From contig OU015566.1 in the NCBI GenBank assembly GCA_907165135.1, positions 11,532,001 to 11,596,000 on the forward strand: a DNA stretch of 64,000 nt, read 5' to 3'. Below the pieces are notes generated by a model. The model was not told the DNA's origin. It was given only the letters and a program-made list of their open reading frames with translations, and did not search any database. This DNA comes from Oikopleura dioica. Its lineage: Eukaryota > Animalia > Chordata. Below are positions 27,768 through 41,082 of this stretch, piece by piece (the stretch's first letter is position 1; each line of letters starts with the position of its first letter). The translations under genes were made by a program, and so were the position numbers.

Positions 27768-30700
27768 GGAAAGACACCCACGGCAGAGCTAAAAGAAGGG
27801 AAGAAGCTACCGAGATATCTTCAAGAGAGGCCAGAATACTCAGCAGATGATAGGATCAACAGACCTCTTCCAGATCCAGACTCGTATTATGACCAGAATA
27901 CCTACATTGTTCTCAACAGACAGAATATTATTTTCAGATTTAATAGATCAAAGGAAGAGTTTTCAGTTCAATTTCTGGCAAATCGCCTAAGTAACATTCT
28001 TTTCGCAAAACTCAATCCAAGAGCCTCGGAATATTTTCGATGGGAAGCACAGTCCGCCAATTCTGTATATCAATGTTCATCCATCCACTCTTCTCTCGCT
28101 TTATGATGCTTACTGTGATTATCAACTGTGGATTTATGACGCTTTCGAAGCCTCCGGAATTTGTCGAAGACATTTTGGAACATGTATTTATGACGATTTA
28201 TACTCTTGAATGTATTGTTAAAATAATTGCCAGAGGATTTTTCGTCGATCAATTAAGGACCGGAGCAGAAATTTTTAAGTTTGAAGACTGTGAATTGTGA
28301 CGATTTCAAATAACTCGTTCAAAAATTTTTTCTAACACCCCCTTTTTTTGTGCTCATTTGAAAGAGCGTGAAAAACTGGTCGAGAAAATGCTGGTCTTAT
28401 CATCGGTGACGTCACGAGTGGCGCGCGGGCGCCCCCTAAAGGTCTTATTAGGTCAATTTCGGGCTACGCGATTTCTCCGGTCATGCATATCGCACATGCA
28501 TGGTTAGCATCTAGAATTGATCGTCGTGAGCAGGGCTACATGTCCCGGCCAAAATCGTCAAAATCGGACCACGTCTTCACCAGCTGGTTGACCGGCAAAT
28601 ATCTCAAAATGACAAAATCACTTACTTTTGATAAAGGCAACCTACCGATGGAAGTAGGGGGTTGCCCTGGACTCGAGCCCGAATAACTGCCGTATTCGGC
28701 CACTTAGTGCCGGAGGAACTCCCGGAGGACTCCTCTGCTGGAAGAAAAGCTGCTGGAAGACTAATATTAAAAAATATAAATACAAATAAAATTTAAAGCC
28801 ATGATTGGCTAGTAATTGCCGTATTCAGCCACTTAATGCCGGAAGACCTCCCGGAGGAACCCTCTGCTGGAAGAAAGGCTGCTGGAAGACCAATTTTTAA
28901 AAATAAAAATACAAAGATAAAGCCTGGATTGGCTAAATATTATCTAGTAAGCCGCATTCAGCCACTTTTTGCCGAATGACCTCCCGGAGGACCCGCCTAC
29001 AGAAAAACCGACTGCTGCGTTCATTTTTTTAAATCAGAGTTAGGGCGAAGCCGACCCAAAGGGGAGGCCGCACTCGTTCATTCTATTCAATCAGAGTCAG
29101 GGCAAAGCATCATTTATGATCCCGAATATTTCGAGATACTCCTAACTTAAATGTTGAAAAATCCGGGAGGTTTTCAAGAGATCTAACATTCGGGATTTAC
29201 AAAAATCTGAAAGCGAACCAGAGAAGACTTCTTCAATCCAATTCGTATTGACTCTTATTGAATAAAATGATTAGACGTTGCCATCCCAACGGGTCGGCTT
29301 CGGCCTGACTCTGATTGAAAGGAATGAACGAGCGCGGCCTCCCCTTCGGGTCGGCTTCGCCCTTACTCTGATTGAAAAGAATGAATGGGATTGGCCTCTC
29401 CTTCGGGTCCGCTTCGCCCTTACTCTGATTGAAAAGAATGAACGGGATTGGCCTCCCCTTCGGGTCGGTTTCGCCCTTAATCTGATTTAAAAGAATGAAC
29501 GGGCGTGGCCTCCCCTTCGGGTCGGCTTCGCCCTGACTCTGATTGAATAGAATGAACGGTTGTGGCCTTGCCTTCGGGTCGGCTTCGCTCTGACTCTGAT
29601 TGAAAAGAATGAACGGTTGTGGCCTTCCTTTCGGGTCGGCTTCGCCCTGACTCTGATTGAAAAGAATGAACGGTTGTGGCCTTCCCTTGGATTAGAAATC
29701 CCAAACTCGATACTTTTGAGACTCTGGGTTTGTAAACCCAGGTGACAGCCTACAACCCTTCCCTTCGGGTCGGCTTCGCCCTGACTCTGATTGAAAATAA
29801 TGAACGGGCGTGGCCTTCCCTTCCGGTCGGCTTCGCCCTGACTCTGATTGAAAAGAATGAACGGTATTGGCATCCCCTTCGGGTCGGTTTTGCCCTTAAT
29901 CTGATTCAAAAGAATGATCGGGCGTGGCCATCCATTCGGGTCGGCTTCGCCCTGACTCTGATCTAAAAGGATGAACGGGCTTGCTGCGGCTTATTAGATA
30001 ATATTTAGCCAATCCAGGCTTTATCTTTGTATTTTTATTTTTAAAAATTGGTCTTCCAGCAGCCTTTCTTCCAGCAGAGGGTTCCTCCGGGAGGTCTTCC
30101 GGCATTAAGTGGCTGAATACGGCAATTACTAGCCAATCATGGCTTTAAATTTTATTTGTATTTATATTTTTTAATATTAGTCTTCCAGCAGCTTTTCTTC
30201 CAGCAGAGGAGTCCTCCGGGAGTTCCTCCGGCACTAAGTGGCCGAATACGGCAGTTATTCGGGCTCGAGTCCAGGGCAACCCCCTACTTCCATCGGTAGG
30301 TTGCCTTTATCAAAAGTAAGTGATTTTGTCATTTTGAGATATTTGCCGGTCAACCAGCTGGTGAAGACGTGGTCCGATTTTGACGATTTTGGCCGGGACA
30401 TGTAGCCCTGCTCACGACGATCAATTCTAGATGCTAACCATGCATGTGCGATATGCATGACCGGAGAAATCGCGTAGCCCGAAATTGACCTAATAAGACC
30501 TTTAGGGGGCGCCCGCGCGCCACTCGTGACGTCACCGATGATAAGACCAGCATTTTCTGGACCAGTTTTTCACGCTCTTTCAAATGAGCATAAAAAAAGG
30601 GGGTGTTAGAAAAAATTTTTGACCGAGTTATTTGAAATCGTCTGTCTCGTGGGAGACTTCTATTTCTGATCCCGTGATAAGTTATGTTCGCGACCCATGG

Positions 30701-33700
30701 AACCTGGTTGACCTGTTTGTCGTTGGACTCGGCTACATCATGCAAATCATCGACTTGATTAGTCCGTACATCAGAATGGGAAAGGGTTAATTATGCTCCA
30801 CAGTTTCTTTCTCATACCGGTACTATCAAGAGTTTCTCGATGTTTGGCGTCAGTCTGCCAGAATATTCCCGATTTTAATTAACCCACCAAAGCGACGAGT
30901 GCGACAACTGACATTGATCAAGCCTTTGCTTCGTCACACAGTGGCCCTCAAGGTGGATCTTCTGGTCTCACAGCCCTGCGGGCTTTCAGAGTTCTGAGGG
31001 TTCTCAAAACAATGTCGATAGTTCCTGGTTTGCGCTCGATTGTCCAAGCGCTCCTGCATTCGATTCAAGCTCTAAAAGATGCCGTAGTTCTGACATTGTT
31101 CTGCCTGTCTGTATTTGCCTTGATTGGGTACCAGCTTTTCCATGGAATGCTGAGGAGCAAATGTGTCCGGAAACCAGACTTAGGTAAAATAAAAAGCGCT
31201 TATTCTTAATTTTAACTTTACAAAAGACTCAAGTCAATATTTGAAGAGCTTCTTTTCTGAAGATATATTTAAGAATAATCAGTCTAAAACTTGGCTTCAC
31301 CAAATTTGCCGATTGATTATTTGTAGTCACAATATTTTGCCCCTAAGTGCATGATCTTGTTTAGAGCTCGTCGGCCAATTCCCCTTGGAATTCACAATTT
31401 GGAACATCGACACCAGCGAATATGTTTTTGAAGATTCGAAGGAAAAAATAAGGGACTTTTTGAACACTTTCCGTAAGTTCCTCATTTTCTTCCGTTATCA
31501 AAGCTGTTTTCAGGGAACGATCTTTTTCCACATGATCATCATTCAGTATCAGAAGATAGTCTCTACGGAAGGACCATTCTTCCCTGTGGAAAAGATGCTT
31601 CAAATGTCACATTTTTCGAACGAATATTTCTCAACAAAGACTTTCTCTCTAGTGGACCTAATTCTCCGAATTCACACATTCCGACATTCGATGAGCCACA
31701 TTTCAATCTAGGCCCGGTTAACCAAACATGGTGTTACGATCGTTCTTCTTCCGATTGCATTTCGTGGACATTATCAGAAAAAATATTGAAAAAACAACCT
31801 GGGTCGATGAGAGAAATCATCAAGAAAAACCTAATCGGGAGGCAAAATCACCAACCAGTTTTTCGCCAGTCAGAAGCCTTGGACCAAGTTGCTTATTCAC
31901 TCGGACTCGGGAATGTCCAAAAATGCTCGCACAAATTGAGCATCAATGTCACCCGAGAGGTCAACGAGACCGCTTGGAACGAAGACATGGATCACTATCT
32001 CATGAACCGAAAAGAAAACACGCTCTTTTACCACAAGGACTCAGTTGAAATTCCGAAACAAGAGCCCTTCCTCTGCCAGGACGACGATTCTTGCATCGAC
32101 AATATCAAATTGGCCAAAACAAGATGCCTGACGAACGAGTCTTACGGCCCGATGGAGATTCGAAAAGACTTTTGCGAAGAAAAACTGAACCACACTTTCG
32201 AATGCAAAGAAACGCTGACAAATCCGGATTACGGATATACAAGCTTTGACAGTTTTCATATGGCGTTTTTGACATCGTTTCGATTGGTGGCGCTTGATGC
32301 CTGGAATAGGCTGTATTATTTAACGCTGCATACATCTGGTCAAGGATATGTTTTCTTCTACATCGGATTGGTGTTTCTCGGGTCTTATTATCTTATCAAC
32401 TTGATCTTGGCGGTCGTTTACATGGCTTACGAAGAAGAAGTCGCAGCAGTTGAGGAAGAGATTCAGCAAATGGAGGCGGAAGAGGCAGAAAGACGCGTTC
32501 GACAATCGGTGATGCAGAGAACTTCTGATATGTCAGCAGATTCGAGGAGCGATGCAGACAAAAAGGACTCTTTTCTCAACCCTATTCCTGAGCTGAAAAT
32601 TGACACGTGCGCCGATGCAACCCCTAAATCTCTCCACAAACTTCCACTTGTAAAAACGCTCTCAAACAATTCCAACGCTTCTGGATTCTCCGGTCTCTCG
32701 GGCCGCTTTAATCTGAGAACTCCGAAGCTCTCCCCTGGCAATCGACTCGATGTTTCTAACAATTCCTCTATCAGGCTCAAGCTGAATTCCAGCTCTGGCT
32801 CCAGTACGAGGGAAGTGAACTCGATCGTTTCTGATTGCGATTTAAATGAAACTGGATCAGAAGTAAAAACGCTGGATAGATGGAATTTGCTTCGATTGAA
32901 AACGCCCGATCTTGGTAAATTAGATCATTTTTAAGTGTCTTTTATAAAATGTCATTTTACTATATGTCACATGTTTGCCGCTTTTTAAAACTCTTTGTGC
33001 TTTGGAGCGGGAAATCCATCCAAGTTTCTCTTGAACTCAATGATTTCATCAGTCTAATTTCAGTTCGTAAAGCAATAGAAGAAACAGGGGATGATCCCAG
33101 CTCAGGGGTTTCCCGCTCACGCTCATTTCGAGCACGACAGCTCTATCGCAGTCAAAAACCTCGAATGCTAGTTAGCGGTCACACTCGTAATATTCGCACG
33201 ATATTTAATTGCATCCATATCACTTTTTATATTGTTCATTTTTTATTCGATAAACGTTTGATGCTTTCACAGTCACTTGCACGTAAAAAGTTGTTTGCGA
33301 CCCGTGATAAGCTGTTGTTGAAGAGGCTCAGCGACAGCGAAAACTTGAGGAGCTTCAAGTGGCTAATGGGAGGAGCAGAAGGAATTCAGGAAATTCGCAG
33401 AATAGCTTTATGTCAAGTAAGATCCTCCCAATTCCATCTTTTCAAAATAATAATTCAGATCGTTCAAAGACCCGCTCAAGAAGAACTTCAGGGGGCTTAC
33501 CCGAGGATCAAGATCAAGACCAGACGAAAACCCCGCTGCTAAATGGCTCAACTCCTTCTGGAGAGTATATTCAGCGCAAGCCACGAGCGCCCACTCGACT
33601 TACCTCGACCAGTGACCTCTATAAAACCGAGTCCGAATTCGATGTCTTCCACAATTCGGAAATATCAAAACTGCCAAGACGGTCTAGGACTGGCACGCTT

Positions 33701-36700
33701 CCATTTATTTATCGACCAGATAGGCACGGTTTCTTATCTTACAGTAGTCGCCTTCTTTTCCAATTTCAGAAATTGAATCTTGAAACTGTAAAAGACACAA
33801 AACAACAGACGAAGGAACAATGTCATACATCAGAAGGCTGATTTATCGTTCATCTCACTGTTTTTGCTGCCCTCCAGGGTGGCTTCCAATTCAGGTCTGG
33901 TTGCATTTCATTCTGTATCAAATTTGATCTTGAAAGAATTGTTATTGCTATAAATTTTAATTGAAATCAGCCAAAATAAAGAAATTTATGAAGAAAATCG
34001 TGACGGATCCCTTTTTCGAAGTCGTTATTACGTTTTGCATCCTGGCGAATACCTTCTTCATGACTCTGGAAAAATATCCGAAGGAAAACTATCCTGAGCG
34101 TGAGCCGCTTCTCGACAAAGCGAACAAAGTCTTCACGATTATCTTTATCGTAGAAATGGTGTTGAAGATCATTGGACTGACGCCACATCTGTACTTCAAA
34201 GAACAGTGGAATATTTTCGATTCCGTCGTCATCATGTTTTCAATTCTTGAGCTGGCCTTGAGCACGTTAGCGACAAATCTGGCTGTGCTCCGAGCCTTCC
34301 GGTTGTTGAGAATTCTCAAGCTGGCGAAATCATGGCCGACGCTGAACAAACTGATCAGGATCATTGGGCGGTCTTTAGGCAACCTCGGTCATTTATCCTT
34401 CGTCCTGTTTATTGTGCTCTTCATCTTCGCCGTCATTGGAATGCAGCTCTTCCGTGCCGACTACCTCAAACACTTCAACGACGGAATGGAAGTCAACGAG
34501 ACGACAAAGATCCATCTTCCACGATGGCACTTTATCGATTTCCCTCACGCTTTTTTAATCGTTTTTCGAATTCAATGCGGAGAATGGGTGGAAAGCATGT
34601 TCGAATGCATGAAGGTCTCGAAGCCAAAAATCTGCATTCCAATCTTCATCACCGTTTTCGTCATCGGCAACCTCGTTATTCTCAATCTTTTCTTAGCTTT
34701 GCTACTGAACTCGTTCAGTGGAGATGTTCTCCAGCAAACAGAAGCTAGCAGTAATGCTTTCGCCTTAGCTGGAGAGAGAATTCAAAGATGCATCGTCCAC
34801 GTCGCCAAGAAAATCCCAGTTTGTCTCGGAAGCTGTCAGCAATTTGCCCTTGCTCAGTGGAAGAAACACTTCGCGGTAACAACAATAAAAGAGCCGACAA
34901 ATCCCTGGGATGATGAATTTATCCCAATTAAAGCAGGCGTGTGCGGCGTCTCAGACGCGTTTTCTAGAAGCCCCAGTCTGTCAAAAGCTTATATTCACAC
35001 GCTTGTTCTGCCTAATGAAGCCTCAAATGGAACCTCGCCAAACAAATCACTGAATAATCTCTCTAATCCCGACGCTCAATATCTCCAGCAGCAACAAGAA
35101 ATTCAATCGACGGAAAACGCGGCTTTGCTGGAAGGAAAGCAATACAACCCAGAAGAATGCCTCCCAAAACTCACGCCATATTTGAACAAGTACATCGACC
35201 CAGAGTCGCACTTTTCTCAGCAGTGCATGAAGATCCGAATCAATTGCTACAAAATCGTTGAGCATCGTATTTACGAAACCATTCTCATCTTCACCATTTT
35301 GCTCTCTTCGATCGCTCTGGTCTTCGAAGACATAAAACTCAACGACCAACGAAGCTCATTGAAAGTCGTGCTTTACTGGGCAGATGTCTTTTTCTGCATA
35401 TTTTTCAGCATTGAAATGATAATGAAGGTGATTGCTTATGGTCTGCGAAAATACTTCACGAACTGGTGGTGCTGCTTAGATTTCTTCATCGTGACCGTCT
35501 CGGTCATTTCGATCTACTATTCTCCCCTTCCTCATTCAAAAGTGACGAATTCAACTACAAGCTCGCTGTCAGTTCTTCGAGTTCTAAGAACGATGCGTGC
35601 TCTGAGACCCCTGAGAGCTCTCTCGAGATTCCAGGGAATGAGAGTCGTTGTTGATGCCCTTATGAAAGCGATCCCTTCGATTATGAATGTCTTCCTTGTT
35701 TGCGTTATTTTCTGGCTTATCTTTTCAATCCTTGGCGTGAACCTTTTTGGTGGGAAATTTTCGCGATGCGTGGATTTGAAAACTTCACAGATTCTTCCTG
35801 CTAAATGCCCGCTGCTCAGAGGTATCAATGGATCAGTGTCGGAAGCAGATAAATTGAGATGCAAAGACAGAAAAGATCCCATGTTCGCCGAGTGGGCTGC
35901 GGACAAACATCATTGCTTGTACATAAAAGAATGGTTTAATGACACTGAGAAGAATGAATCAAAGTATGATTGGGAAACACCACCGGTGAATTTTGATGAT
36001 GTTTGGAATGGATATTTGGCTCTTTTACAAGGAAAGGCTTAATAACCTTTGATGAGGACTTAATTTTTTGATACAGAGATCTCCCAAATAATAGAAAGCT
36101 CCTCGAATTGAGTGTCTTTCGGGAGAATTATTTGAGGTTCATAACTAAAGATTTCTAAGTCACCTTTTTGAACAACGTTCCTCTCAACTTGGCTTGTAAG
36201 TTGTAGCTTCCCGTTATATCTATAATTAAAATCAAGTTCCAAATCTTTTGGGGTATCAATATGTAGGGCAACAATAATATAGTTGCCAACAGTGACAGAA
36301 AAGTATGCTTCATAATCGTTAAAAACCACATTTCCAGATTGTGGTAAACTGTAACGCGTCCCTTCATTATAAGTAGATACTCGATAAAATCCATCACTAA
36401 GTAAAGGGTATTTTATATGAATCTTGAAAAAATTAATGTCCTTGCCAAGTGCCCATAATATTTCACGGATATGATCGGGAGAATTATAACGATCAAAATC
36501 AAAAGGGGATCTTCCTGGGTCTGATCGAGACTTAATCAAATTGTATTTGTCGTCAAACTAAGTATTTCTCTTCGTGTTAGGTTCCTGTTTCTTTCTTCAC
36601 TCACTTTTCTCATTACGCGATTTTCCGTACTCAGCTTTCATCTTTTCACGTTTTCATTGGTTTTCTGCGTAATGGAGGGCACATGTCTATTATTTTTAGA

Positions 36701-39350
36701 ATTGTCTTCTCTCATTCTGTTGAACATGCCTTCAAAGAAACTTTTTAATCCCGATGATTGACTTTCCATTTCGACCTCGAGTTGACTCCTTAGAAGCTCA
36801 ATCTGTTCCTTCAAATTTTTTATTTCATCTTTTGCGGCGTCTTGAGACTCTCGGAGATTTCTAATCTCTATAAATTTTTCTCGTTATAATTCAAGAACAC
36901 CAAAGAATGTTTGTTACCAGATTCAAGAGTTGGATTACTGAGATTTTCATTTCCCGAAATCGAGGATTTTTCTCTGTCGCTCATATGGACTCGTTATGCA
37001 AATTTTTGCACTTTTTTGAATGAAAAGTTTTCATTGAAAACTTTGATTCGCTTTTTCGCACATCAACTTTGCTTGCACGTGTGATTTTTCAATAAGAGCA
37101 ACAAATAACGAAATTTGAGCCAAATATAAGTCGCTACATTTATGGGATGGCTTGAAATTATGCAGAATGCCGTAGATATCCGAGGGGAAGGTCTTCAACC
37201 TGAGTACGAGTCATCAATGTGGAGCTATGTCTATTTCATTATCTTCATCGTCGCTGGTAGCTTCTTCTGCCTCAATCTGTTCATTGGTGTGATCATCGAC
37301 AATTTTAATCAGCAAAAAGTCAAAAAGAAATCAAACGGTTTCGACGACGGCGTTTTCCTTACAGACGAGCAAAGACAGTACTACGACGCAATGCGAAAGA
37401 TGGCAGCAAAAACGCCGAAAAAACCAATTCCACGGCCGAAGAATAAATTCGCAGCGGCAATTTACAATTTAGTAACCGATCGAAGATTCGAACTCGCGAT
37501 CATGGTGGCAATTTTGTTGAACATGGTTGTGATGGCTATTGAAAGTCATGACGCCTCGGATAAGGTAAAGTTCAAAAAACAAGCTCTTTTATACGAAATT
37601 TTAGACGATATTTGTGCTGGAGCAGCTAAACAACATCTTCGTCGGCGTCTTCGGTGCTGAGGTCATTCTGAAGCTCATCGGCCTAAGACAGCACTACTTT
37701 ACTGTTCCTTGGAATGTTTTTGACTTGGTTGTTGTGGTGGTTTCCGTCATCGCATCTGCTCTGTCCGACCTCATCTCGCATCTCATTCAGCCAACAATTT
37801 TCAGGATTGTCAGACTCTTCAGAATTTCTAGAGTCTTGAGGCTTATCAGGGAGGCAAAAGGAATAAGAACGCTACTGTTTGCGCTCATGATGTCGTTACC
37901 AGGTATGGCATTATTAAAAATAATTAAAAACGCGACATTCAAGCTCTCCTCAACATCGGAATGTTACTCTTCCTGGTCATGTTCATGTTTGCGATTCTCG
38001 GAATGAGTCAATTTGCTTACGTCCAGAAAAAGGGAGGAATCGATGACATGCTCAACTTCGAGACTTTCCCAAACGCCTTCTTGCTACTCTTTCAAGCGTC
38101 GACGTCAGAAGGATGGAATACTTTTCTTGAGCCAATTATGCTCGACACAGAACCTTATTGCTAGAGTTCGAAATTCTAAAATATTTTCCAAGAAAATCGT
38201 AAATTTTCTCCTAATCGATTTTAAACTCAATACAAGCGACCCTCACAAAGAAGGTATCAATAACCCTGTCAAGGGAAAAGGCAACTGTGGAAACTCGACA
38301 ATAGGCATCACCTACTTTATCGTCTTTGTCTTCATTACCTTCCTCATCGTCGTCAACATGTACATCGCCGTCATTCTCGAAAACTTTGACGTAGCAACGA
38401 GAGAAAATGCAGAGCCTCTAACGGCTGATGATTTCGAACAGTTCTTCGAAGTTTGGCAAAAGTTTGACGACAAGTTGACCCAGTTGATCTCGTACGACCA
38501 GCTTCAACTGCTGCTGCATCAGCTTGACATGCCATTGAAGGTAAATTTGAGAAATTTAAGGGTGTGTTTATGATATTAAAGGTGCCATTCCCGAATCGCC
38601 CATTCATAACACACTATGAAATGCAAATGACATCCGACGGTCAAATCCACTGTCTTGAAGTCATCATTGCTCTCATCAAAAAAGTGCTTGGTGATTCCCC
38701 AGCTCTCAATGCCATGAAGGTAATCTTCCTCTGAAAACCCGATATAAAACTATTCAGGCGGCGATGGTTCAAACATTCCAAATGAAGTGCAAGTCCACAG
38801 TGCAGTATGAGCCGGTGATGACGACGATGGAATACGCTAGAATGGATAGAGCCGCGAAGACCATTCAAAACGCCTGGAGAGAGTGGTACTATGAACAGGT
38901 AAGAATTTCACTATCAAACTGCTTCGACACTTGTTCAGGGAGGAAGAGAGCTGAGGGGACCAGTAACAACGAGAAATCAAATTGCTCAAAAATTTGAAAG
39001 TCTTCTGCGGCTCAGTTCTGATACCAAGCCTTGCATAAGATCTGCTATTTCTCTTCCAAACATGGTTAGCTTTCGAATCTTATAATTGACCATATCATTT
39101 GTTTTTCAGCAAGTTCTTCGTAGAGAAGAGCACAAATTGAAAATCAACCCTCTGGAAAAACGATCGTTAGATTCTCTTATCAAAGGTCTAAAAAGCATAA
39201 GAGGTAATAAATACGTCTTTGAAATGATTTCAACCCTGAATTTTCAGATGAAGAAGACGACTTCCAGTACACAGAATCCAATCACCACAATGCCCAGCAA
39301 AATCGCTCAAGTAAAAGAAAAGTCAATTTTACAAAAATAATCTTGCTTTA
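27768..39350 (+). CDS. Nav: Voltage-gated sodium channel alpha-subunit family member (4x6TM), atypical DEME filter; exact 5' and 3' ends uncertain
   Basis: Nav N-terminus ([21 protein letters not shown]), RDPWN, and four intact S4 segments. P-loops ALDAW / CGEW / TFMGW / TSEGW, III-IV linker [12 protein letters not shown]-terminal EF-like region [14 protein letters not shown] and IQ motif [10 protein letters not shown]. Confidence 0.97.
28689..29010 (+). repeat. ~130-bp tandem sub-repeats within the TIR (mirrored at 29985-30252)
   Basis: GCCGYATTCRGCCACTT...CTCCCGGAGGA units start at 28689, 28818 and 28951. Confidence 0.85.
29290..29980 (+). repeat. 57-bp minisatellite (about 11 units) inside the foldback element
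   Basis: CGGGTCGGCTTCGCCCTGACTCTGATTGAAAAGAATGAACGG core recurs at 29290, 29347, 29404, 29461, 29518, 29575, 29632, then 29766, 29823, 29880, 29937. About 1.5 inverted units at ~29020-29108. Confidence 0.95.
36060..36984 (-). CDS. Coiled-coil + beta-sandwich (MATH-like?) protein nested antisense in Nav intron
   Basis: ATG 36984, short GT-AG introns, coiled coil [31 protein letters not shown], then a 159-aa terminal ORF. Lies within host intron 36032-37130. Confidence 0.65.
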
Positions 39351-40692: not shown

Positions 40693-40827
40693 AGCTCTCC
40701 TCAACATCGGAATGTTACTCTTTCTGGTCATTTTTATGTTTGCGATTCTCGGAATGAGTCAATTCGATTACGTTCAGAAAAAAGGAGTAATCGATGACAT
40801 GCTCAACTTTGAGACTTTTCCAAACGC
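40693..40827 (+). pseudogene. 135-bp duplicated fragment of Nav domain IV S5/P-loop exon
   Basis: Aligns to 37942-38076 ([41 protein letters not shown]) with substitutions. Truncated at both ends. Confidence 0.92.
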
Positions 40828-41082
40828 ATTTACCTCCAAAAACAAACTAAAACACTGCTGAAGCCAATAAAAATAAACAATTTTTGTTAATAAAAATTGA
40901 GATACCTTATGAGAATCTTGTCGTGCAAGATTTGTACAATTTACATTTTCATAATAGTAAGCTTGCATATATTCATGAGAATCGAGCCTATCTTATCAAA
41001 AAAGGGAAAATGATATTGTGGTTATAATACGGCCGGTCGGTGAGTCTCCTTCAGTCTCATTCAGTTTTGCTATAGTCTCAAG

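What the first reader, a model, noticed from the sequence alone, without database searches (positions are those of the whole stretch)
32296..38110. Nav-family channel with a D-E-M-E selectivity filter
Seen: filter positions are D (32296, ALDAW), E (34582, CGEW), M (37142, VATFMGW after splicing 36031 to 37131) and E (38108, STSEGW). Established: Na+ selectivity in Nav1 channels depends on DEKA, especially the domain III Lys; Cav channels use EEEE and Nav2 channels DEEA. All four S4 sensors and the IQ motif are intact, so the gene looks functional. Inference: a voltage-gated channel with three acidic residues and a neutral Met, probably Ca2+-permeable or non-selective. Whether this filter has been reported before cannot be checked here.
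Basis: partly seen in the sequence, partly recalled or inferred. Interest (0 to 1): 0.85.

Follow-up and report, generated by a model that had tools for sequence, protein, structure and literature searches.

The report
Tunicate Nav1b channel with D-E-M-E pore
This is an intact, strongly conserved larvacean copy of a tunicate-specific sodium-channel paralog (Nav1b) in which the pore lysine that makes sodium channels sodium-selective is a methionine. It therefore probably passes cations non-selectively, calcium included, and close versions of it have already been noted in sea squirts.

Summary
The codons at 32296 (D), 34582 (E), 37142 (M) and 38108 (E) sit at the four selectivity-filter positions of a four-domain channel gene on the + strand, about 27.8-39.0 kb.

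The 36031/37131 junction is a non-canonical GA-AG intron. Homology supports it, and so do two more GA-AG introns in the same gene. No second domain III pore exon exists in the window. The RNA-seq check gave no reads, so it tested nothing.

A careful tree places the gene in chordate Nav1, not Nav2. It falls in the tunicate Nav1b clade (100/100), for which Kawai et al. 2021 reported D/E/T/E in Ciona. That paper's Fig. 1B legend colours a pore Met, so D-E-M-E has probably already been drawn.

New here:
- Glu in domain IV is constant in all nine Nav1b sequences examined.
- Domain III is K in Styela, N in Phallusia and Clavelina, T in Ciona.
- Domain III is M in the window and at least six metagenomic relatives.
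- The window and its nearest relative share 88% amino-acid identity although silent sites are saturated.

The gene is therefore functional. Mutagenesis of vertebrate Nav1 predicts a voltage-gated channel that is non-selective among monovalent cations and permeable to Ca2+. This is inferred, not measured. The finding is a real but moderately novel member of a known group.

The parts
27768..27958 (+). N-terminal cytoplasmic exon ([20 protein letters not shown]). The start codon lies further upstream and is not resolved. The 3' border is one of several possible.
   Evidence: Open frame and similarity to the Nav1 N-terminus.
28024..28257 (+). Domain I S1-S2 exon, ending ...[12 protein letters not shown].
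   Evidence: tblastn with Ciona Nav1b. The border was chosen because all homologs have 8 residues between ARGF and RDPWN.
28258..30681 (+). GA-AG intron (AAG|GACCGG...ATAAG|), 2424 nt, which holds the foldback element of finding s1-336622.
   Evidence: Only this junction gives the conserved 8-residue spacing. Its two ends pair at -12.3 kcal/mol, z -2.2.
30682..30785 (+). Domain I S3 exon ([12 protein letters not shown]...).
30953..31183 (+). Domain I S4-S5 exon ([11 protein letters not shown]...).
   Evidence: tblastn at 77% identity to Ciona Nav1b. S4 motif found.
31514..32914 (+). Exon covering the domain I extracellular loop, P-loop, S6 and the start of the I-II linker. The 5' border is provisional.
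32296..32298 (+). Filter residue of domain I: Asp (FRLVALDAW).
33312..33930 (+). I-II linker coding region. Exon borders are not resolved. It includes [10 protein letters not shown] just before domain II.
   Evidence: Open frames. The junction options are ambiguous.
33973..36031 (+). Single 2.06-kb exon: domain II, the II-III linker (no ankyrin-binding motif), and domain III S1 to the P1 helix, ending GYLALLQ.
34582..34584 (+). Filter residue of domain II: Glu (QCGEW).
36032..37130 (+). GA-AG intron (CAAG|GAAAGGCTTAA...ATATAAG|), 1099 nt, inside the domain III P-loop.
   Evidence: Gap-free continuity with homologs. No other domain III pore exon exists in the window. Its ends pair at -9.7 kcal/mol, z -2.3. 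A homologous intron with a GC donor is present in L004.
37131..37564 (+). Exon covering the domain III filter, S6, the III-IV linker (DGVFLT in place of the IFM latch) and domain IV S1.
37142..37144 (+). Filter residue of domain III: Met, at the position of the Nav1 Lys.
   Evidence: Met is conserved in L004, L006, L007, P0294, P0300, P0301 and P0303.
37605..37902 (+). Domain IV S2-S4 exon, flanked by 40- and 41-nt GT-AG introns.
37944..38163 (+). Domain IV S5 and P-loop exon.
38108..38110 (+). Filter residue of domain IV: Glu, at the position of the Nav1 Ala.
   Evidence: Glu is present in all nine Nav1b-clade sequences.
38164..38236 (+). GA-AG intron (CTA|GAGTTC...ACAAG|), 73 nt.
   Evidence: There is no GT donor. 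This junction keeps the conserved C(Y)DPHK...GNCGN, which is contiguous in L004. Its ends pair at -8.9 kcal/mol, z -3.1.
38237..38540 (+). Exon covering domain IV S6 and the proximal C-terminus.
38582..38719 (+). C-terminal (EF-hand-like region) exon.
38758..38997 (+). C-terminal exon with the IQ motif ([12 protein letters not shown]) and the first in-frame stop. Further 3' exons are not excluded.

Best explanation
The window holds the larvacean (Oikopleura-type) ortholog of tunicate Nav1b. This paralog arose from the chordate Nav1 sodium channel by duplication within tunicates.

Shown:
- The gene is intact and has four domains with canonical S4 voltage sensors and an IQ motif.
- Its filter ring is Asp-Glu-Met-Glu, where Nav1 has Asp-Glu-Lys-Ala.
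- Its III-IV linker carries VFL where Nav1 has the IFM latch, and it lacks the ankyrin-binding motif.
- It has been kept by purifying selection.
- Glu in domain IV is the constant mark of the whole Nav1b clade.

Inferred by parsimony: the domain III Lys, still present in Styela, was replaced at least twice, by Met in the larvacean lineage and by Asn/Thr in other ascidians.

Inferred mechanism: depolarisation opens the pore through the conserved S4 sensors. With no positive charge in the ring and three carboxylates, the filter cannot tell Na+ from K+ and should admit Ca2+. The channel would then act as a voltage-gated non-selective or Ca2+-permeable cation channel, not as a Na+ spike channel. 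Inactivation, if present, would use the VFL triad.
For: Motifs at the stated codons. M aligns with Lys and E with Ala of solved human Nav1 chains without gaps.

The gene model has no stops. S4 and IQ motifs are present and the ankyrin motif is absent.

The best solved relatives are vertebrate Nav1 (E 5e-172), against 9e-125 for NavPaS and 2e-94 or weaker for Cav.

The careful tree (LG+C20, 1313 columns) gives:
- Nav1b clade of 9 sequences, 100/100.
- The four D-E-M-E rows together, 99/97.
- The whole group inside chordate Nav1 (100/100), with Nav2 as outgroup. The quick tree agrees.

Filters in the Nav1b clade are Ciona DETE, Phallusia and Clavelina DENE, Styela DEKE. All carry DGVFLT where it could be read.

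Met is kept in L004, L006, L007, P0294, P0300, P0301 and P0303.

Window against L004 over 853 codons: 88% amino-acid identity, pN 0.10, and only 29% identical bases at four-fold sites, which means saturation.

Published context:
- CiNav1b has D/E/T/E, no ankyrin motif and a weak latch (PMC8192821).
[quoted passage not shown] A positive charge in the ring is needed to exclude Ca2+. DEAA, DEQA and DEEE give PK/PNa of 0.76-1.1 (PMC2391246).
- Filter rings without Lys are classed as calcium- or non-selective (PMC6259924).
Against: - There is no transcript evidence. Four RNA runs gave 0 reads, which is no test, so the 36031/37131 junction rests on homology and intron features.
- No Nav1b of any tunicate has been recorded, and no K-to-M filter mutant was found in the literature searched. 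Permeation is extrapolated from vertebrate Nav1 mutants.
- The outer charge ring is also changed (N-E-E-N against E-E-D-D, read from the motifs), so conductance could be low.
- The 5' end, the I-II linker exons and the true 3' end of the gene are not resolved.
- The species name rests on earlier unchecked notes.
Confidence: 0.7

Rival explanations
1. The channel is still Na+-selective, by a different arrangement. For example, the long flexible Met side chain together with the domain IV Glu and the altered outer ring could narrow the filter. It would then work as a second Na+ spike channel.
For: It belongs to the Nav1 clade and keeps D and E in domains I and II. Styela Nav1b keeps Lys beside the domain IV Glu (DEKE), so the clade may have started Na+-selective. 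Some channels reach Na+ selectivity by other means, such as DKEA or the Cav3 exon 12a turret (PMC6259924).
Against: Every tested Nav1 filter without Lys lost Na+/K+ selectivity, including the neutral replacements DEAA and DEQA, and even Arg does not substitute (PMC2391246). Nothing positive is left in the inner ring.
Confidence: 0.12
2. It conducts little or nothing in response to voltage. It would act as a sensor, leak or scaffolding protein, as vertebrate Nax (filter DENS) does.
For: Another Nav1 descendant without Lys, Nax, appears in the same tree with DENS. Two outer-ring carboxylates are lost here, and Nav1b lacks the ankyrin motif and the IFM latch.
Against: All four S4 segments keep the full Nav1 charge pattern, almost residue for residue with human Nav1.5. 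S4-S6 and the III-IV linker are the best conserved parts between the window and L004, at 93-96%. That is expected if gating is in use.
Confidence: 0.1
3. The Met and Glu codons are an artefact. Either they are assembly errors, or the locus is a decaying pseudogene, or a Lys-encoding alternative domain III exon is the one really used.
For: There are no RNA reads. The junction is non-canonical. The locus has a transposon in one intron and a duplicated exon fragment 2.5 kb downstream.
Against: - The same ATG and GAA are found in independent metagenome assemblies of several lineages.
- No stop or frameshift was found in about 1950 modelled codons.
- Purifying selection is strong while silent sites are saturated.
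- No second TF.GW exon exists in any frame of the 64 kb.
- GA-AG introns are frequent in Oikopleura dioica (PMC7072748), and this gene has three with the same end-pairing.
Confidence: 0.03

Closest known systems
CiNav1b, the Ciona Nav1 paralog described by Kawai et al. 2021 (J Biol Chem 296:100783, PMC8192821). Represented here by Ciona savignyi H2ZPU3 (P0001) and Ciona intestinalis (P0183).
   Same: - Same clade (100/100).
- D and E in domains I and II, and Glu in domain IV.
- Lys lost in domain III.
- DGVFLT latch and no ankyrin-binding motif.
- Same FRLVALD.W and FRIQCGEW P-loops.
   Different: Domain III is Thr in Ciona and Met here. The outer-ring residue of domain IV is D in Ciona and N here. 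Identity is only about 45% over domains II-III. Intron structure is very different.
Styela clava Nav1b ortholog (P0188).
   Same: Same clade. Identical domain IV motif (STSEGWNTF) and the same VFL latch.
   Different: It keeps the domain III Lys (D-E-K-E), so it shows the likely ancestral state of the clade.
Vertebrate and ascidian Nav1 proper (human Nav1.5, CiNav1a/TuNa1), filter DEKA.
   Same: Four-domain architecture, S4 charge patterns, IQ motif, P-loop scaffold. Best hits among solved structures.
   Different: Those have Lys(III) and Ala(IV), the IFM latch, an ankyrin-binding motif and an E-E-D-D outer ring. None of these is kept here.
Nav2 (BSC1/DSC1/TuNa2 type), filter DEEA, preferring Ca2+ or non-selective.
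   Same: Probably similar in function: a voltage-gated four-domain channel with D and E in domains I and II and no Lys (PMC6259924).
   Different: Separate clade, used as outgroup. The third carboxylate is in domain III there and in domain IV here.
Vertebrate Nax (SCN7A), filter DENS.
   Same: Another Nav1 descendant that lost the domain III Lys (P0119).
   Different: It arose independently inside vertebrates and has no Glu in domain IV. From my own knowledge, not tested here, Nax has degenerate voltage sensors, whereas the S4 segments here are canonical.

Membership tests
Chordate Nav1 (voltage-gated sodium channel alpha subunit) | Four homologous six-TM domains with positively charged S4 segments. 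| tested here: met
   Domains I-IV were recovered by tblastn and phmmer. All four S4 motifs match human Nav1.5 patterns.
Chordate Nav1 (voltage-gated sodium channel alpha subunit) | Phylogenetic placement inside the Nav1 clade, apart from Nav2 and Cav. | tested here: met
   Inside chordate Nav1 with 100/100 support, Nav2 as outgroup. The quick tree with Cav as outgroup agrees.
Chordate Nav1 (voltage-gated sodium channel alpha subunit) | D-E-K-A selectivity filter, with Lys in domain III. | tested here: not met
   The filter is D-E-M-E.
Chordate Nav1 (voltage-gated sodium channel alpha subunit) | [quoted passage not shown] | tested here: not met
   DGVFLTDEQ aligns with D-IFMTEEQ of Nav1.8.
Chordate Nav1 (voltage-gated sodium channel alpha subunit) | Na+-selective, fast voltage-gated current. 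| not testable with these tools
   Needs electrophysiology.
Tunicate Nav1b paralog group (Kawai et al. 2021) | Clusters with CiNav1b, apart from Nav1a and Nav1c. | tested here: met
   Clade of 9 rows at 100/100, with Nav1c as sister and Nav1a outside.
Tunicate Nav1b paralog group (Kawai et al. 2021) | Altered filter (published as D/E/T/E), no ankyrin-binding motif, weakly conserved latch. | tested here: met
   The filter is D/E/x/E with x = M. No [VA]P[IL]AxxE[SD]D motif is present. The latch is VFL, as in all Nav1b. Published features: PMC8192821.
Nav2 (DEEA channels) | Placement in the Nav2 clade and a D-E-E-A type filter. | tested here: not met
   The DEEA sequences form separate clades. 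Domain III is Met and domain IV is Glu.
Voltage-gated calcium channels (Cav1-3) | EEEE or EEDD ring and the Cav clade. | tested here: not met
   Cav chains score far lower (2e-94 or weaker, against 5e-172). Domain I is Asp, and the Nav-type short domain II P-loop (CGEW) is present.
   Three GA-AG junctions are inferred from homology. Two of the three have an AAG|GA donor. All three have end-pairing with z of -2.2 to -3.1, against -0.8 to +1.2 for seven GT-AG introns. No RNA confirms them.

The most novel reading that the evidence does not exclude
Tunicates turned a duplicate of the chordate Na+ spike channel back into a voltage-gated, Ca2+-permeable or non-selective cation channel, by a route not in the catalogue of known filters. 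First came Glu in domain IV (D-E-K-E, still seen in Styela). The domain III Lys was then lost at least twice independently, to Met in larvaceans and to Asn/Thr in ascidians. The larvacean D-E-M-E form would be a filter type with a thioether side chain at the constriction, one that has never been recorded. It could underlie a distinct excitability in these animals.
Probability: 0.4. Interest if true: 0.65.

Novelty: new member of a known kind. Interest (0 to 1): 0.45.

Why it matters
The domain III lysine is the textbook determinant of Na+ selectivity. Natural Nav1 descendants that dropped it are therefore free experiments on how selectivity evolves.

This gene shows that the loss is old, fixed and under selection in larvaceans. 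Read with its ascidian orthologs it gives an ordered natural series, DEKA -> DEKE -> DEME / DENE / DETE. That series could be expressed and recorded to ask three things:
- what Glu in domain IV does on its own;
- whether it relaxes the need for Lys;
- what a Met at the constriction does to Na+/K+/Ca2+ permeation.

It also warns annotators that 'sodium channel' labels on tunicate Nav1b genes probably misstate their ion selectivity. The practical reach is limited, because the paralog and its odd filter are already in the literature and no function is known.

Tried and rejected
- RNA support. The look-up of sequencing runs listed no RNA run that holds the stretch. Read laying on three bulk runs and one single-cell run gave 0 reads over 32250-38200.
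- Alternative domain III pore exon. A six-frame scan of the whole window for [TS]F.GW found only the TFMGW exon.
- Canonical alternatives to the GA-AG junctions:
  - For 28257/30682 a GT-AG option exists, but it adds 4 residues to a loop that has a fixed length in all homologs.
  - For 38163/38237 there is no GT donor, and the GC option deletes the conserved CDPxK segment.
  - For 36031/37131 there is no GT near the end of the conserved GYLALLQ.
- U12-type intron. Considered for 36032-37130 and dropped, because neither the donor (GAAAGG) nor the branch region fits the U12 consensus. This is my own reading.
- Literature search for 'DEME' found only an author's name. 'Nav1b' is held only by Kawai et al. 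2021.
- treekit with its own MAFFT run timed out. Pre-made alignments were used instead.
- The exact exon borders of the N-terminus and the I-II linker stayed ambiguous. The start codon was not found.
- Structure prediction was not run, because the spliced protein cannot be passed by reference and the filter alignment to solved structures is gapless anyway.
- The species was not verified independently.

Full report
OBSERVATION. They pair the Met with the domain III Lys ([10 protein letters not shown] / atfKgwmdim, Nav1.8) and the Glu with the domain IV Ala ([13 protein letters not shown] / fqittsAgwdgll, Nav1.6). The same alignment puts DGVFLT opposite the IFM latch.

GENE MODEL. Stop-free frames and tblastn with the closest full-length homologs give a + strand gene from about 27.77 to 39.0 kb. 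I modelled these exons:
- 27768-27958
- 28024-28257
- 30682-30785
- 30953-31183
- 31514-32914
- an unresolved I-II linker block
- 33973-36031
- 37131-37564
- 37605-37902
- 37944-38163
- 38237-38540
- 38582-38719
- 38758-38997

About 1950 codons are free of stops and frameshifts. The S4 motifs of all four domains match human Nav1.5 almost residue for residue. An IQ motif is present. The ankyrin-binding motif, found in Ciona Nav1a and human Nav1.5, is absent. The start codon, the linker exon borders and possible further 3' exons are not resolved.

THE CRITICAL JUNCTION. Joining 36031 to 37131 gives GYLALLQ/VATFMGW. Ciona savignyi Nav1b aligns across it without losing a residue, 1336 at 36030 and 1337 at 37130.

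Four points make the junction credible:
- Two further introns of the same gene are best explained as GA-AG. Junction 28257/30682 is the only one that keeps the invariant eight residues between ARGF and RDPWN. Junction 38163/38237 keeps the conserved C-DP-K...GNCGN segment, which is uninterrupted in a relative.
- The other resolved introns are GT-AG, and four of them are only 38-41 nt long. GA-AG introns are unusually frequent in Oikopleura dioica (PMC7072748). About 11-12% of its introns are non-canonical, and the median intron is about 49 nt (PMC8008620).
- All three GA-AG introns show pairing between their two ends (-8.9 to -12.3 kcal/mol, z -2.2 to -3.1), while seven GT-AG introns do not (z -0.8 to +1.2). 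This is a small independent check of it.
- No other TF.GW-type exon exists in any frame of the 64 kb.

RNA evidence could not be had. No RNA run was listed as holding the stretch, and four runs laid on it gave zero reads, which the tool calls no test.

WHAT IT IS. The best solved relatives are vertebrate Nav1 channels (E 5e-172), ahead of NavPaS (9e-125) and Cav (2e-94 or weaker). A search of 1.84 billion representatives gave Ciona savignyi H2ZPU3 as the best full-length hit, at 45% identity. Its filter reads D-E-T-E.

Kawai et al. 2021 (PMC8192821) name three Ciona Nav1 paralogs. [quoted passage not shown] Their tree includes two Oikopleura dioica Nav1-like gene models. Their Fig. 1B legend lists Met among the coloured pore-turret residues. 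So a pore Met, very likely this one, has probably been drawn already, although the text does not discuss it. The figure itself is not held.

A careful tree (IQ-TREE, LG+C20 PMSF, 28 sequences, 1313 columns) gives this placement:
- The window pairs with a TARA metagenome contig, L004 (100/100).
- These join two more distant metagenome or Logan sequences, L006 and L007/P0004 (99/97).
- That group is sister to ascidian Nav1b of Styela, Clavelina, Phallusia and Ciona (Nav1b clade, 100/100).
- Nav1c is next (100/100), then Nav1a.
- All of this lies inside chordate Nav1 (100/100), with Nav2 as outgroup.

The quick 56-sequence tree rooted on Cav agrees. The gene is therefore a Nav1b ortholog, not an Nav2.

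CONSERVATION. Filter rings across the clade are:

| Source | Filter |
|---|---|
| Window | D-E-M-E |
| L004 | D-E-M-E (domain IV STSENW) |
| L006 | D-E-M-E (domain IV STCEDW) |
| L007 | D-E-M, then the contig ends |
| Ciona | D-E-T-E |
| Phallusia, Clavelina | D-E-N-E |
| Styela | D-E-K-E |

A search with the domain III exon found further metagenomic fragments (P0294, P0300, P0301, P0303). All have TFMGW and none has Lys.

Glu in domain IV and the VFL latch are thus constants of the clade, while domain III varies. With Lys in the outgroups and in Styela, parsimony on the tree implies at least two independent losses of Lys. This is an inference from nine sequences.

Between the window and L004, 853 aligned codons are 88% identical at the protein level (pN 0.10). 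Four-fold degenerate sites are only 29% identical, which means saturated. The III-IV linker and domain IV S2-S4 are the best kept parts, at 93-96%. This rules out a pseudogene or an assembly error.

HOW IT PROBABLY WORKS. Shown: intact sensors, gate-forming segments and calmodulin-binding motif, all under selection, and a filter without any positive charge and with three carboxylates.

Established from vertebrate Nav1 mutagenesis, as summarised by Lipkind and Fozzard 2008 (PMC2391246):
- Na+/K+ selectivity 'absolutely requires' the Lys.
- A positive residue in the ring is what excludes Ca2+.
- DEAA, DEQA and DEEE give PK/PNa of 0.76-1.1.

The 2018 review by Fux et al. classes Lys-free rings as calcium- or non-selective and does not list DEME or DETE (PMC6259924).

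Inference: a voltage-gated cation channel that does not discriminate Na+ from K+ and lets Ca2+ through. It may also be blocked by Ca2+.

Caveats:
- The outer ring is N-E-E-N instead of E-E-D-D (read), which may lower conductance.
- No K-to-M mutant and no Nav1b recording were found.
- Persisting Na+ selectivity (about 0.12) and an Nax-like non-conducting role (about 0.10) stay open.

COMPARISON AND NOVELTY. It works most like Nav2 (DEEA) or the DEEE mutants, but it is not a member of Nav2. It belongs to Nav1 by descent while failing two classical Nav1 features, the DEKA filter and the IFM latch. It meets every feature published for tunicate Nav1b.

I file it as a new member of a known kind. 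The Met variant is not mentioned in any text searched, but it was probably already shown in a figure.

- the clade-wide Glu(IV);
- the K/N/T/M series, with Styela as the Lys-keeping form;
- the depth of conservation of Met in larvacean-type lineages.

This is of moderate interest to students of channel evolution. Recording the natural series would be a neat test of filter theory.

ORGANISM. The evidence fits an Oikopleura-type larvacean:
- tiny GT-AG introns;
- frequent GA-AG introns;
- placement as sister to ascidian Nav1b;
- nearest relatives found in marine plankton metagenomes.

Earlier notes on this genome name Oikopleura dioica. I did not verify the species.

Noticed in passing
window 36020-36045 and 37115-37135; L004:9340-9465: The intron in the domain III P-loop has a different position in each relative. 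In the window it falls at Q|V (GA-AG, 1099 nt). In L004 it lies 12 nt further upstream in the coding sequence, at L|A (GC-AG, 98 nt). L006 and P0294 have no intron there, and L007 has a GT intron after FMG. The window and L004 introns share their 5' sequence (G[A/C]AAGG[C/G]TTAATAA). The identical 12 nt CTCTTTTACAAG is exonic on the donor side in one and on the acceptor side in the other. This looks like intron sliding and is unexplained.
   Followed up: partly
window 28258-30681, 36032-37130, 38164-38236: All three GA-AG introns of the gene can pair their 5' and 3' ends next to the splice sites, while seven GT-AG introns cannot. The stem of the domain III intron is GGCUU/GAGCC in the window and GGGUU/AACCC in L004, a C-G to G-C swap.
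   Followed up: partly
P0188 (Styela clava), P0186 (Phallusia), P0187 (Clavelina): Ascidian Nav1b orthologs carry D-E-K-E (Styela) and D-E-N-E (Phallusia, Clavelina). These filters are not mentioned in the papers read here. Styela looks like the intermediate state, with Lys kept beside Glu in domain IV.
   Followed up: partly
window 40694-40831: A partial second copy of the domain IV S5 exon (...[45 protein letters not shown]). It breaks off before the pore motif and lies between two PLAC8-like genes. It belongs to finding s1-336657.
   Followed up: no
window 28299-30642: The foldback-like element of finding s1-336622 lies wholly inside the first GA-AG intron of the channel gene. The splice sites and the end-pairing flank it.
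   Followed up: no
window 34990-35010; L004:7590-7660: The II-III linker holds a segment conserved between the window and L004 (A[16 protein letters not shown]) at about the place where Nav1a has the ankyrin-binding motif. It does not fit that motif's consensus. It could be a degenerate remnant or a different binding site.
   Followed up: no
P0300, P0303 (metagenome gene calls): Prokaryote-style gene callers started ORFs at the filter Met (MGWLEIM...) on short plankton contigs. These 'proteins' in public collections are therefore fragments of larvacean Nav1b exons.
   Followed up: no
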